From: Octopus bimaculoides
Taxonomy: Eukaryota
Assembly (NCBI RefSeq): GCF_001194135.2
Contig: NC_069003.1
Span: forward strand, 24,363,526-24,399,675
Direction of reading: 5' to 3'
Length of the DNA stretch: 36,150 nucleotides
A model generated the notes under the pieces. The model made no database searches, had not been told where the DNA came from, and saw only the letters and a list, made by a program, of their open reading frames with translations. The first letter of the stretch is position 1. Each line of letters begins with the position of its first letter. Shown piece after piece: positions 3,933 to 6,900 of this stretch. A program made the translations under genes and the position numbers.

Positions 3933-6900
3933 TCAGATATGCAGACATATATACACACACATATCCAGTAAGCAAGCAAATATGGACATGCATACAGTTT
4001 CAGATTTTGGCACAAGGCTAGAAATTTTGATGGGGCAGGGGTTTAACCCTTTGTTACCAACCTGGCTGAAACCACCTCTGGCTCTGTAGTACAAATGTTT
4101 TGTTTTCATAACTTTTGAATTAAAATCTTCCACCAAACCTTAGTCACAATTTATGTTCCTAACACTAGCTTAATTATAACTAAGTTATTTTACTAAATTC
4201 TTTGTTATATCCAAAATTAATTGAGAGAAAAGCAGACCATCTCAAAATAAATACAGTAATGAAAGAGTTAAGTCAATTAAATCAACCACAGGGATCAAAT
4301 GATACTTATTTTATAAACTCCAAAAGGATGAAAGGCAAAGTCGGCCCTGATGGAATTTGAACTCAGAATGTGAAGAGGAAATGCCACTAAGCATTTTGCT
4401 TGACATGGTAATGATTCTGCAAGCTTGCAGAGCTATTACTAATCCTTTCTACTAAAAGTACAAGGCCTGAAATTTGTGGGGAGGGGACTAGTCAATTACA
4501 TTGCTACCCAGTGTTTCATTGGTACTTAATCTATGAAGCCCAAAATGATGAAAGGTAAAGTTGATCTCGGCAGAATTTGAACTCAGAATGGAATGTAAAG
4601 ACAGCTGCAGCGCCTCTAAGCATTTTGCCTGGCATGCTAACTGTTCTGCTACCTTGCCATCTTCACCTTCTCGATGCTTCTCGAAAATGAATAAATTTTG
4701 TTAAAGATACCTCTTGATTGTGTTGTGATGTTACACAGGATGGCATGGAATGTCATCAACATCATCTTGTGTGCCATAGCCATGAATGACCACCAACACG
4801 TTGTGCCATTATCTTTTGTGCATGTGTGTGTGTGTGTGTTTGTGAGTGTGCGTGCATGCCTGTGTTTGTATTAGTGTGTTTGTGTCTGGGTTTGTCCTAA
4901 TTTTCCACTGCCTGATGACTGAGGTTGGTTTGTTGACATCCCCAGTAACTTAACTGTCTGACAAAAGCGACTGACAGAACAAGTACCAGACTAAACAAGT
5001 AGGTACTGGGGTCAATTTGTTCAACTAAAATCCACTTCAAGGTGGTGAGCCAGCATGGCTGCACTCCAATTATCAAAACAAAAGAAAGTCAAAAGATTGT
5101 TGCTTATACCAGCACAAAAAGCAAGTTTGTAATCAACATGCTGACTACTTCATATTCATTATCTTATTTGCATGGATAGAAAAATACTTCTTTCCTTCTT
5201 TGATGGAACGATTAAAACTCATGCAAGCATTTCCAGTATATAATGAACATGCGAGCTATTTTTTATGTTGTTTCTTACGCGGTCTGCAGGCCAGTCTTTT
5301 GACAAAAGATACCAATCCACTGCTTGAATATTTCAAGCGTGTCTGCTTCGTATAAATATAACAGGTTACGGAGTCAGGAGCGTAGGTGGCCATCCGACAT
5401 GAAGGCCGGCTTTTGCAGCTTTCTTTACAATCATTTGCAGAGTCAAGTGTGAGAACGGAGTCAAATTTTAGATTGCCAAAAGTGTTTGGAAAAGTAACTA
5501 TCTCAGAAACCTTTTCTGGAGGAATAAGAGATGATAAACATAGACTTAATATAAACATCAATATATATATATATATATATATATNNNNNNNNNNTATATA
5601 TGATATACATTTATATATATATATATACATTTATATATATATATATACATTTATATATACAAAATATTTTTTTAAGTGTATCAAAACATACATAGTTTGA
5701 AAATGCATTAAAAATGAATCAATACTAATCTCACACATATACACACATACACACACACGCATACATACAAAGATATATATATATATATATATATACATAC
5801 ANNNNNNNNNNATGAATCAATACTAATCTCACACATATACACACATACACACACACGCATACATACAAAGATATATATATATATATATATATACATACAC
5901 ATATATATAATTACATACATATACACACACACACACACACATACATGCATGCATGCATACATACATACATACATGTATACATATATATATATGTATGTAT
6001 GTATATACAGAGTCCGCCAAAAAATTGTGTACATACTTCAGGAAAGGAAAAATGTGTATAGATATTTTAATTCAACGTTATTGCAATTTATTTGGTGTTA
6101 TCACAATGTGACAAAACATTGAAAGATGTATTTATATTTATAGAGGTACTAATAAAAGTAAAGTCTTTATTCAGATTTTTCCTTTCCTGAAGTGTGTATA
6201 CATTTTTTTGGGTGGACTCTGTAGTATATATATATATATATATGTAAACTTCAAAGTCATTGCCACCATTTTTTTTTTTTTTTTTTTGTAAAACTGAAAT
6301 AGTTTTGAACTCAATAATGAGTTTTGAGTTATATATTTATCTATCATTACTTGGAAGTATATAGATATACTTGCATAGCAAGTGACTTGATCTGTGATCA
6401 TGTGCTGAAACAAAGACAATAGCAGCGTGAAAGATGTTTGTAAGCCATTTAAGAACATGCAAAAAACCCATTAGTTTCACCTTAACATTAAAATTTAATA
6501 TGTTGAAGTGAAATTAACGTTTTTTTTTTTTTGCGTTATCTTAAATGGCTTACAAACATCTTCCTTGCTGCAATTGTTCATCGTTACTTGATATTTTAGA
6601 AAATTCTTGACAGATTGTAGCACTTACCCCGAGAACAGACACACTGGTAGCCAAAGGGTGTAAGACGTTTACATGTGGCGCTATTGTAGCAAGGAGAAGA
6701 CGTGCATGGGTCAATAGAATTTTCACAGAATGGTCCATAGAATCCTGTGAGGTAGGGATTGAGAGACAAAGAGATATTGTTAATATTTTGCACACGTAGG
6801 ACATTTAATCACAGAATCAATATAATAATGAATAAAGTATTATGTATATATGTGTGTGTGTGTGTATACATATATATATATATATATNNNNNNNNNNNNN

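What the first reader, a model, noticed from the sequence alone, without database searches (positions are those of the whole stretch)
5279..5515. PAN/apple exon inserted between Cys5 and Cys6 of an EGF module: candidate domain-switch cassette
Seen: joining exon 6628-6744 directly to exon 1986-2121 gives a perfect EGF end, [15 protein letters not shown] (C5-x8-C6). The 237-nt phase 1-1 PAN exon with strong splice sites lies exactly in that intron. Including it gives ...CVCSR-E-[PAN][15 protein letters not shown]. Its tail C-R-P copies the C5-x-x register, so C-x8-C spacing is rebuilt after the PAN, but the exon adds 5 Cys (odd number). Inference: alternative splicing could toggle between an intact EGF and an EGF/PAN hybrid with one free thiol, or a domain nested in the EGF loop. 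I do not recall PAN in uninflatable-type proteins.
Basis: partly seen in the sequence, partly recalled or inferred. Interest (0 to 1): 0.78.

Follow-up and report, generated by a model that had tools for sequence, protein, structure and literature searches.

The report
Apple-domain exon inside a split EGF
An octopus gene for a giant Sushi/EGF surface protein carries a well-formed PAN/apple-domain exon in the intron that cuts one EGF module in two, but no data I could reach show whether it is ever spliced in, and the draft assembly around it is incomplete.

Summary
On the minus strand, 5515-5279 is a 237-nt phase 1-1 exon with good splice sites. It encodes a PAN/apple module (Pfam PAN_1 36.9 bits; predicted core pLDDT 74-97; structural hits all PAN/apple). 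It lies, as assembled, between exon 6744-6628 (ends C-V-C5-S-R) and exon 2121-1986 (starts G-F-K-G-I-N-C6-E). Joining those two directly gives a canonical EGF. The exon has 5 Cys: four core plus an apple-C6-type Cys whose usual partner is not in the exon.

The alternative-splicing idea is untested. No transcript, annotated protein or ortholog containing this exon was found. The window is a gappy Octopus bimaculoides draft. The exon sits on an isolated 2.1-kb contig between two gaps, and gaps in this window demonstrably hide exons. A hidden half-EGF exon upstream is unlikely. One in the 768-N gap downstream cannot be excluded.

The "C-R-P copies the register" point is weak. Twelve of 16 module exons in this gene end 1-2 residues after their last Cys, and the conserved Gly becomes Arg on inclusion.

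Best reading: a shuffled apple exon in an EGF-splitting phase-1 intron, probably optional. Moderate interest, low certainty.

The parts
5279..5515 (-). PAN/apple module exon. 237 nt, phase 1-1, 79 codons. 5 Cys: four core (C-x3-C-x5-C-x11-C) plus an apple-C6-type Cys 24 residues after the fourth.
   Evidence: Translation and splice sites. Pfam PAN_1 36.9 bits. FXI and prekallikrein apple domains are the closest solved sequences. AF2 with MSA gives core pLDDT 74-97. All significant Foldseek PDB hits are PAN/apple domains.
6628..6744 (-). Exon A. Tail of the preceding EGF (G-FYGPFC-E) plus C1-C5 of the next EGF. It ends C-V-C5-S-R followed by one base, G (phase 1).
1986..2121 (-). Exon C. (G)FKGINC6-E tail plus C1-C5 of the next EGF. 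Phase 1 to 2. It joins in frame to exon 1400-1270.
5516..6627 (-). Intron between exon A and the PAN exon (1112 nt as assembled), microsatellite-rich. The 10-N gap at 5802-5811 is flanked by identical 88-nt copies, so it is an unmerged contig overlap. The 10-N gap at 5585-5594 lies inside (TA)n. The assembled sequence holds no module-like exon.
2122..5278 (-). Intron between the PAN exon and exon C (3157 nt as assembled). It contains SINE-like repeats and the 768-N gap at 2696-3463, the only place where a hidden exon next to the PAN exon remains possible. The PAN exon's contig is 3464-5584.
6888..6987 (.). 100-N gap that must hide at least one exon. The upstream exon 7366-7135 ends in phase 1 with T, and T plus GA of exon A makes TGA.
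7135..7366 (-). Exon U2 (phase 0 to 1). No Pfam domain. Ends ...[19 protein letters not shown].
8831..9033 (-). Exon U1 (phase 1 to 0). No Pfam domain. In frame with exon E14 and U2.
10948..11139 (-). Exon E14, a 6-Cys Sushi-like module (Pfam Sushi 21.2 bits).
11789..30531 (-). Upstream exons of the same gene, forming one open frame. In order: a CUB-like pair (by eye only), Sushi x4, EGF_CA x2, Sushi x3, a weak HYR, and an HYR-like exon. 100% identical to a UniRef Octopus protein named SVEP1 (the species part of the name is cut off in the output).
210..1400 (-). Downstream EGF exons 1400-1270 and 416-210, in frame with exon C.

Best explanation
The 237-nt exon is a real coding module of the PAN/apple type. 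It was most likely brought by exon shuffling into a phase-1 intron of a giant Sushi/EGF extracellular-protein gene of Octopus bimaculoides (SVEP1/CSMD/Uif-like). That intron happens to cut an EGF module between C5 and C6.

Because the exon is phase 1-1, it can be included or skipped without changing the frame.
- Skipping gives an intact EGF. The junction codon G|GC encodes the conserved Gly.
- Inclusion puts an apple fold inside the C5-C6 loop. The exon carries the apple C6-type Cys but not apple C1. The nearest upstream unpaired Cys is EGF C5, 31 residues before the first core Cys. So the likeliest pairing is C5 with the apple C6-type Cys. That leaves the EGF C6 of exon C, or one of the three, as a free or intermolecular thiol.

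I think it most likely that the exon is optional or lineage-specific rather than an old constitutive part of the protein.

Shown: the exon, its fold class, its phases, its position as assembled, the Cys arithmetic.
Inferred: that it is spliced into this gene's mRNA, that it is alternative, and the disulfide pairing.
For: - PAN identity: Pfam PAN_1 36.9 bits. FXI and prekallikrein apple domains are the best PDB sequence hits. AF2 core pLDDT is 74-97. Foldseek returns only PAN/apple folds at the top.
- Exon quality: the pyrimidine tract, GTAAGA donor and GC content match the gene's other exons, and the exon has the same strand and phase class as 13 neighbouring 1-1 exons.
- The skip join restores an EGF recognised by Pfam. 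The include join lowers Pfam EGF from 34.5 to 20.7 bits, just under its 21.5-bit cut-off.
- No half-EGF or other module exon exists in the assembled parts of either flanking intron. The 5802-5811 gap is an overlap artefact.
- In 453 related PAN repeats the outer Cys pair is present or absent together: 343 have both, 72 have neither, only 10 have C6 alone. So this exon's fifth Cys calls for a partner outside the exon. Exon A ends with just such an unpaired Cys, within the observed C1-to-core spacing range (31 residues; range 18-36, median 24).
- This gene tolerates long C5-C6 loops. The second EGF_CA exon has a 27-residue loop, also present in O. sinensis.
- Precedent for globular domains nested in EGF-like modules: laminin L4 and LF (PMC5338690).
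Against: - There is no expression or conservation evidence at all. No protein in the 5.8-billion or 1.84-billion collections contains this exon or a close relative. The best hits are unrelated multi-PAN proteins at about 30% identity.
- The O. sinensis contig ends 1.1 kb after the HYR-like exon, before this region.
- The exon lies on a 2.1-kb contig bounded by scaffold gaps on both sides, so its order relative to exons A and C rests on scaffolding.
- Window gaps hide at least two exons elsewhere.
- Inclusion leaves an odd Cys and replaces the conserved Gly by Arg, which is awkward for a stable product.
- The junction regions of both structure models have low confidence (pLDDT below 50), so the nested geometry is not supported by modelling.
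Confidence: 0.4

Rival explanations
1. Assembly artefact. The PAN exon is an ordinary tandem module and only appears nested. Either exons are hidden in the 768-N gap (or the (TA)n gap), or the small 3464-5584 contig is misplaced within the scaffold.
For: - The exon's contig is bounded by gaps on both sides.
- An O. sinensis Sushi exon has no counterpart in the window and must fall in a gap.
- Exon U2 cannot join exon A (the junction reads TGA), so the 6888-6987 gap hides an exon.
- Two 10-N gaps are unmerged overlaps, which shows draft quality.
Against: - No half-EGF tail exon exists in the assembled intron upstream of the PAN exon, and the gaps there are an overlap artefact and a (TA)n tract.
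- A hidden exon A-type unit downstream would still leave the PAN between a C5 and a C6.
- The exon's odd Cys fits best after an exon that ends with an unpaired Cys, which is what exon A provides.
- Placement directly after U2 is impossible (the junction reads TAA).
- The intron 1269-417 has no gap to receive the contig.
Confidence: 0.25
2. Unused or decaying exon. A PAN module copied into the intron that is not spliced into mature mRNA, or only at noise level. The protein is always the intact-EGF form.
For: - The exon is absent from every predicted protein searched.
- The skip join is a perfect EGF including the Gly codon, while inclusion lowers the Pfam EGF score and leaves an odd Cys.
- Uif-type proteins are not described with PAN.
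Against: - The frame is intact over 79 codons in AT-rich sequence where the mean ORF is 19 codons.
- All four core Cys and the apple C6-type Cys are retained.
- The Pfam score is well above threshold and the fold prediction is confident.
- Splice sites are as good as those of constitutive exons.
- The public gene models here are fragmentary and also lack exons A and C, so absence from annotation says little.
Confidence: 0.2
3. Alternative 3'-terminal exon. Exon A splices to the PAN exon, the donor is not used, and the frame stops 8 codons later (...[11 protein letters not shown]). The result is a truncated secreted isoform ending in a complete six-Cys apple, with EGF C5 acting as apple C1.
For: This is the only arrangement with exon A upstream that gives an even Cys count. 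An in-frame stop follows the donor after 8 codons.
Against: - There is no AATAAA or ATTAAA within 380 nt downstream.
- The donor is a good GTAAGA.
- A stop soon after any exon is expected in AT-rich intron sequence.
- There is no transcript evidence.
Confidence: 0.1

Closest known systems
PAN/apple modules (factor XI and prekallikrein apple domains, plasminogen and HGF N-terminal PAN, apicomplexan microneme PAN lectins)
   Same: Core C-x3-C-x5-C...C pattern, helix-on-sheet fold and a C-terminal apple C6-type Cys. Shown by the Pfam PAN_1 hit, PDB sequence hits and Foldseek hits.
   Different: It is a single copy inside a Sushi/EGF protein, and the apple C1 is missing from the exon. Its nearest sequence relatives are multi-PAN proteins with no EGF motif in any of the 83 hits.
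Laminin L4 and LF domains inserted in LE (laminin-type EGF-like) modules
   Same: A globular domain placed inside, or after a truncated, EGF-like module. L4 lies between Cys3 and Cys4 of an LE. LF follows an LE lacking its last disulfide, and an unpaired Cys is mentioned there (PMC5338690).
   Different: The fold differs (CBM35-like beta-sandwich against PAN). The loop differs (C3-C4 against C5-C6). The laminin insertions are ancient and constitutive. Here expression is unproven and a skip form would be a normal EGF.
Drosophila Uninflatable (Uif), SVEP1 and CSMD-type mosaic proteins
   Same: Long extracellular arrays of Sushi, EGF_CA, HYR and EGF modules encoded by phase 1-1 exons. Public names for this gene's fragments are SVEP1 and CSMD1-like.
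   Different: Orthology to Uif was not tested. Pfam finds no CUB, and HYR is only sub-threshold. CLECT, FA58C and a transmembrane segment are not in the window. The published Uif domain list has no PAN.
Phase 1-1 module exon shuffling, and young cassette exons
   Same: A symmetric phase-1 module exon in a phase-1 intron. Skipping preserves the frame. All neighbouring module exons are of the same class.
   Different: Shuffled modules usually land between modules. Here the recipient intron lies inside a module, so inclusion interrupts a disulfide loop.

Membership tests
PAN/apple domain (Pfam PF00024 PAN_1) | Profile score above the curated threshold | tested here: met
   36.9 bits against a cut-off of 21.4, E=3.2e-9
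PAN/apple domain (Pfam PF00024 PAN_1) | Four core cysteines (two nested disulfides) | tested here: met
   C69, C73, C79 and C91 of the construct are the only invariant columns in an alignment with 45 related PAN repeats. Spacing is C-x3-C-x5-C-x11-C.
PAN/apple domain (Pfam PF00024 PAN_1) | Helix packed on an antiparallel sheet (PAN fold) | tested here: met
   AF2 with MSA gives pLDDT 74-97 over residues ~51-100 with strand-helix-strand-strand elements. All hits with E<=0.001 and nearly all of the top 50 are PAN/apple structures. This is a prediction, not a solved structure.
Apple subtype (six-Cys, factor XI-like) | Outer C1-C6 disulfide tying the N and C termini | tested here: inconclusive
   A C6-type Cys is present 24 residues after the fourth core Cys. 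No C1 is encoded in the exon. Exon A's EGF C5 lies 31 residues before the first core Cys, against a typical 22-28 and a range of 18-36 in 343 repeats. The pairing cannot be tested here.
EGF-like module | Six-Cys pattern with C5-x-x-G-[FY]-x-G-x-x-C6 | tested here: met
   Met for the skip join only: [13 protein letters not shown], Pfam EGF 34.5 bits with 2 stretches. In the include join Pfam EGF drops to 20.7 bits, below its 21.5-bit cut-off, and Gly becomes Arg.
Alternatively spliced cassette exon | Length a multiple of 3, same phase at both ends, usable splice sites | tested here: met
   237 nt, phase 1-1, acceptor with 17 of 20 pyrimidines, donor GTAAGA. The same is true of most exons in this gene, so it is not specific.
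Alternatively spliced cassette exon | Both inclusion and skipping junctions observed in transcripts | not testable with these tools
   No transcript-derived or annotated protein covers exons A, PAN or C.
Uninflatable (Uif) family | Domain set CUB, CCP/Sushi, HYR, CLECT, FA58C, EGF repeats and a transmembrane segment (PMC3340373) | tested here: inconclusive
   Sushi x6 and EGF_CA x2 are above threshold, EGF is present, and HYR scores 19.4 bits, below its 21.7 cut-off. No Pfam CUB hit. CLECT, FA58C and a transmembrane segment are not in the window. Sequence orthology to Drosophila Uif was not tested.
Domain nested in an EGF-like module (laminin L4/LF type) | Globular domain encoded between two cysteines of one EGF-like module in the mature protein | tested here: inconclusive
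   True of the genomic order as assembled. It depends on the unproven splicing A>PAN>C and on the 768-N gap hiding no exon.

The most novel reading that the evidence does not exclude
A regulated cassette exon in cephalopods switches one EGF module of a giant apical or matrix protein into an EGF/apple chimera. In the chimera the EGF C5 is taken over as the apple's missing C1. That frees the EGF C6 as a reactive thiol for covalent dimerisation or partner capture. It would be a splice-controlled disulfide rewiring, and a case of module shuffling into the interior of another module.
Probability: 0.12. Interest if true: 0.7.

Novelty: new variant of a known kind. Interest (0 to 1): 0.35.

Why it matters
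If the exon is really spliced between exons A and C, it would be a clean natural example of exon shuffling into an intron that lies inside a disulfide-bonded module. One isoform would keep the EGF intact. The other would nest an apple domain in its C5-C6 loop and leave an odd cysteine.

That bears on how mosaic extracellular proteins gain domains, and on whether splicing can rewire disulfides. Free Cys in apple domains are known to mediate covalent dimers in factor XI (my own knowledge, not tested here).

If the exon is not spliced, or the assembly is wrong, this is an ordinary shuffled module or a relic in a draft genome.

Tried and rejected
Searches that found nothing:
1. The A+PAN+C peptide against 5.8 billion proteins: no hit. 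All 72 hits are under 1500 aa, so that collection seems to lack very long proteins, and absence is weak evidence.
2. The 78-aa PAN peptide against 1.84 billion representatives: only multi-PAN proteins at about 30% identity, no ortholog, and none of the 83 hits contains an EGF motif.
3. Exact-ORF look-ups of the PAN ORF (two start variants) and of the UniRef model P0002 in public assemblies: nothing.
4. The O. sinensis ortholog contig (L001) ends 1.1 kb after the HYR-like exon, so it gives no comparison for exons A, PAN and C.
5. A metagenome scan for the PAN peptide, hoping for host contamination: nothing.

Structure:
7. The single-sequence AF2 model of the include isoform was poor (pLDDT 49.6). 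With a PAN alignment the PAN core became confident, but both EGF halves and the junctions stayed below 50.

Ideas rejected:
8. The E14 Sushi-like exon joining directly to exon A as a second 'module + EGF tail' case. Two in-frame exons, U1 and U2, lie between them, and U2 cannot join A.
9. The PAN contig belonging right after U2 (junction TAA) or in the 1269-417 intron (no gap there).
10. A polyadenylation signal right after the PAN exon: none within 380 nt.

Full report
**What the window is.** The gene lies on the minus strand. Fourteen exons between 30531 and 10948 join into one open 850-aa frame. That protein is 100% identical over 60% of its length to a 655-aa UniRef Octopus protein named SVEP1, whose species name is cut off in the output. 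It is 71% identical to an Octopus sinensis protein named 'CUB and sushi domain-containing protein 1-like'. I therefore take the window to be draft Octopus bimaculoides sequence, as the 100% match to a non-sinensis Octopus protein suggests. It contains 12 runs of N.

Pfam supports six Sushi and two EGF_CA modules, plus EGF modules downstream. One HYR scores below threshold (19.4 against 21.7 bits). The CUB-like and second HYR-like exons are recognisable only by eye. A paper on Drosophila Uif lists CLECT, CUB, CCP, FA58C, HYR and EGF domains and no PAN (PMC3340373).

**The observation.**
- Exon A (6744-6628) encodes the tail of one EGF and C1-C5 of the next, and ends C-V-C-S-R plus one base.
- Exon C (2121-1986) begins with the G-F-K-G-I-N-C-E tail.
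- Joining A to C gives [13 protein letters not shown], and Pfam then recognises EGF at 34.5 bits with two matched stretches.
- The 237-nt exon 5515-5279 is phase 1-1. Its pyrimidine tract (17 of 20), GTAAGA donor and GC content (0.43 against 0.35 in introns) match the other exons.
- Its product scores 36.9 bits on Pfam PAN_1 against a cut-off of 21.4.
- It is most similar among solved structures to factor XI and prekallikrein apple domains.
- With an alignment of 45 related PAN repeats it folds confidently (core pLDDT 74-97).
- Foldseek then returns PAN/apple structures almost exclusively.

This is a genuine PAN/apple coding module, not a chance ORF.

**The cysteines.** The exon has five. Four are the invariant PAN core. 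The fifth lies 24 residues after the fourth core Cys, where the apple C6 sits.

In 453 PAN repeats from the nearest relatives, the outer pair is all-or-none: 343 have both, 72 have neither, 28 have C1 only and 10 have C6 only. So this exon's fifth Cys calls for a partner that the exon does not encode. Exon A ends with an unpaired Cys, EGF C5, 31 residues before the first core Cys. That is inside the observed range (18-36) but longer than the typical 22-28.

In an A-PAN-C product, three cysteines compete for one another: C5, the apple C6-type Cys and EGF C6. One must stay free or pair elsewhere. The odd-thiol point is therefore correct.

The 'C-R-P copies the register' point is weaker. Twelve of 16 module exons in this gene end one or two residues after their last Cys. 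On inclusion the conserved Gly of the EGF tail becomes Arg.

**Hidden exons and assembly.** This is the main uncertainty.
- The PAN exon lies on a 2.1-kb contig (3464-5584) bounded by gaps on both sides.
- Gaps in this window do hide exons. A Sushi exon present in O. sinensis has no match in the window. Exon U2 (7366-7135) ends with a T that would make TGA with exon A, so the 6888-6987 gap must contain at least one exon.
- Against a hidden half-EGF exon upstream of the PAN: the 5802-5811 gap is flanked by identical 88-nt copies, so it is an unmerged overlap. The 5585-5594 gap is inside (TA)n. A scan of the assembled parts of both flanking introns for symmetric open exons with three or more Cys found only microsatellite and repeat ORFs.
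- The 768-N gap downstream remains open. A hidden exon A-like unit there would not remove the nesting, but another kind of exon could.

**Expression and conservation.** I found no evidence either way.
- No protein in the 5.8-billion collection shares words with A+PAN+C.
- HMMER over 1.84 billion representatives found only unrelated multi-PAN proteins at about 30% identity.
- Exact-ORF look-ups and a metagenome scan were empty.
- The O. sinensis contig stops before this region.
- The public models of this gene are fragments that end by reading through donors, so absence from annotation is weak evidence.

**Mechanism.** My best reading (confidence about 0.4) is an apple exon shuffled into a phase-1 intron that happens to split an EGF. 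It would be used optionally, or only in this lineage.
- Skipping yields the intact EGF.
- Inclusion nests the apple in the C5-C6 loop, probably with C5 standing in for apple C1, and leaves one odd thiol.
- Nested globular domains in EGF-like modules have a precedent in laminin L4 and LF (PMC5338690).
- This gene already tolerates a 27-residue C5-C6 loop in its second EGF_CA module, and O. sinensis has it too.

The rivals are:
- an assembly artefact (0.25);
- an unused or relic exon (0.2);
- an alternative terminal exon giving a truncated isoform that ends in a complete six-Cys apple (0.1). This is the only arrangement with exon A upstream that has an even Cys count, but no polyadenylation signal follows within 380 nt.

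**Verdict.** If true, it is a new variant of known kinds (module shuffling, nested domains in EGF-like modules) and of moderate interest.

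Noticed in passing
window 16903-17244 / 17601-17700 (gaps between exons 19033-18854 and 16414-16226): The O. sinensis ortholog (P0001) has an extra Sushi exon (ATCKNIDATERNDVNMVSFEPQ...NTDKCP). It has no tblastn match in the window, so an exon is hidden in one of these gaps.
   Followed up: yes
window 7135-7366 and gap 6888-6987: Exon U2 ends in phase 1 with T. Joined to exon A it would read TGA, so at least one exon is missing in the 100-N gap. 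It presumably carries C1-C5 of the EGF whose tail opens exon A.
   Followed up: yes
window 5714-5801 = 5812-5899; flanks of 10680-10689: Two 10-N gaps are flanked by exact duplicates of 88 nt and 62 nt. These are unmerged contig overlaps, so the duplicated sequence is an assembly artefact.
   Followed up: yes
window 21081-21248 (-): The second EGF_CA exon has an unusually long C5-C6 loop, 27 residues ([29 protein letters not shown]). O. sinensis has the same long loop. So this loop tolerates large insertions in this protein.
   Followed up: partly
window 8831-9033 and 7135-7366 (-): Two in-frame exons, U1 and U2 (about 145 aa), follow the Sushi-like exon E14 and have no Pfam match. U2 ends [19 protein letters not shown], which by eye resembles the start of an ephrin-receptor-like Cys-rich repeat.
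   Followed up: partly
window 4271-4700, 23033-23250, 35850-36061, 19966-20190, 9607-9789, 1102-1192: A dispersed SINE-like repeat family (70-81% identity in the longer matches, one short match at 87.5%; one inverted copy near 19966-20064). It gives recurring ORFs such as ...[21 protein letters not shown].... Two copies lie in the intron just downstream of the PAN exon.
   Followed up: partly
window 31519-32374 (-): The UniRef model P0002 starts with [20 protein letters not shown]..., an ORF that also occurs at 24634-24876 and looks repeat-derived. Its next two exons (about 32160-31939 and 31713-31519) look like a further CUB-like domain. The annotated N-terminus is probably wrong.
   Followed up: no
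window 210-416 (-): Exon 416-210 also ends inside a C5-C6 loop ([10 protein letters not shown]|G). Introns that split EGF modules in this loop therefore recur in the EGF part of the gene.
   Followed up: partly
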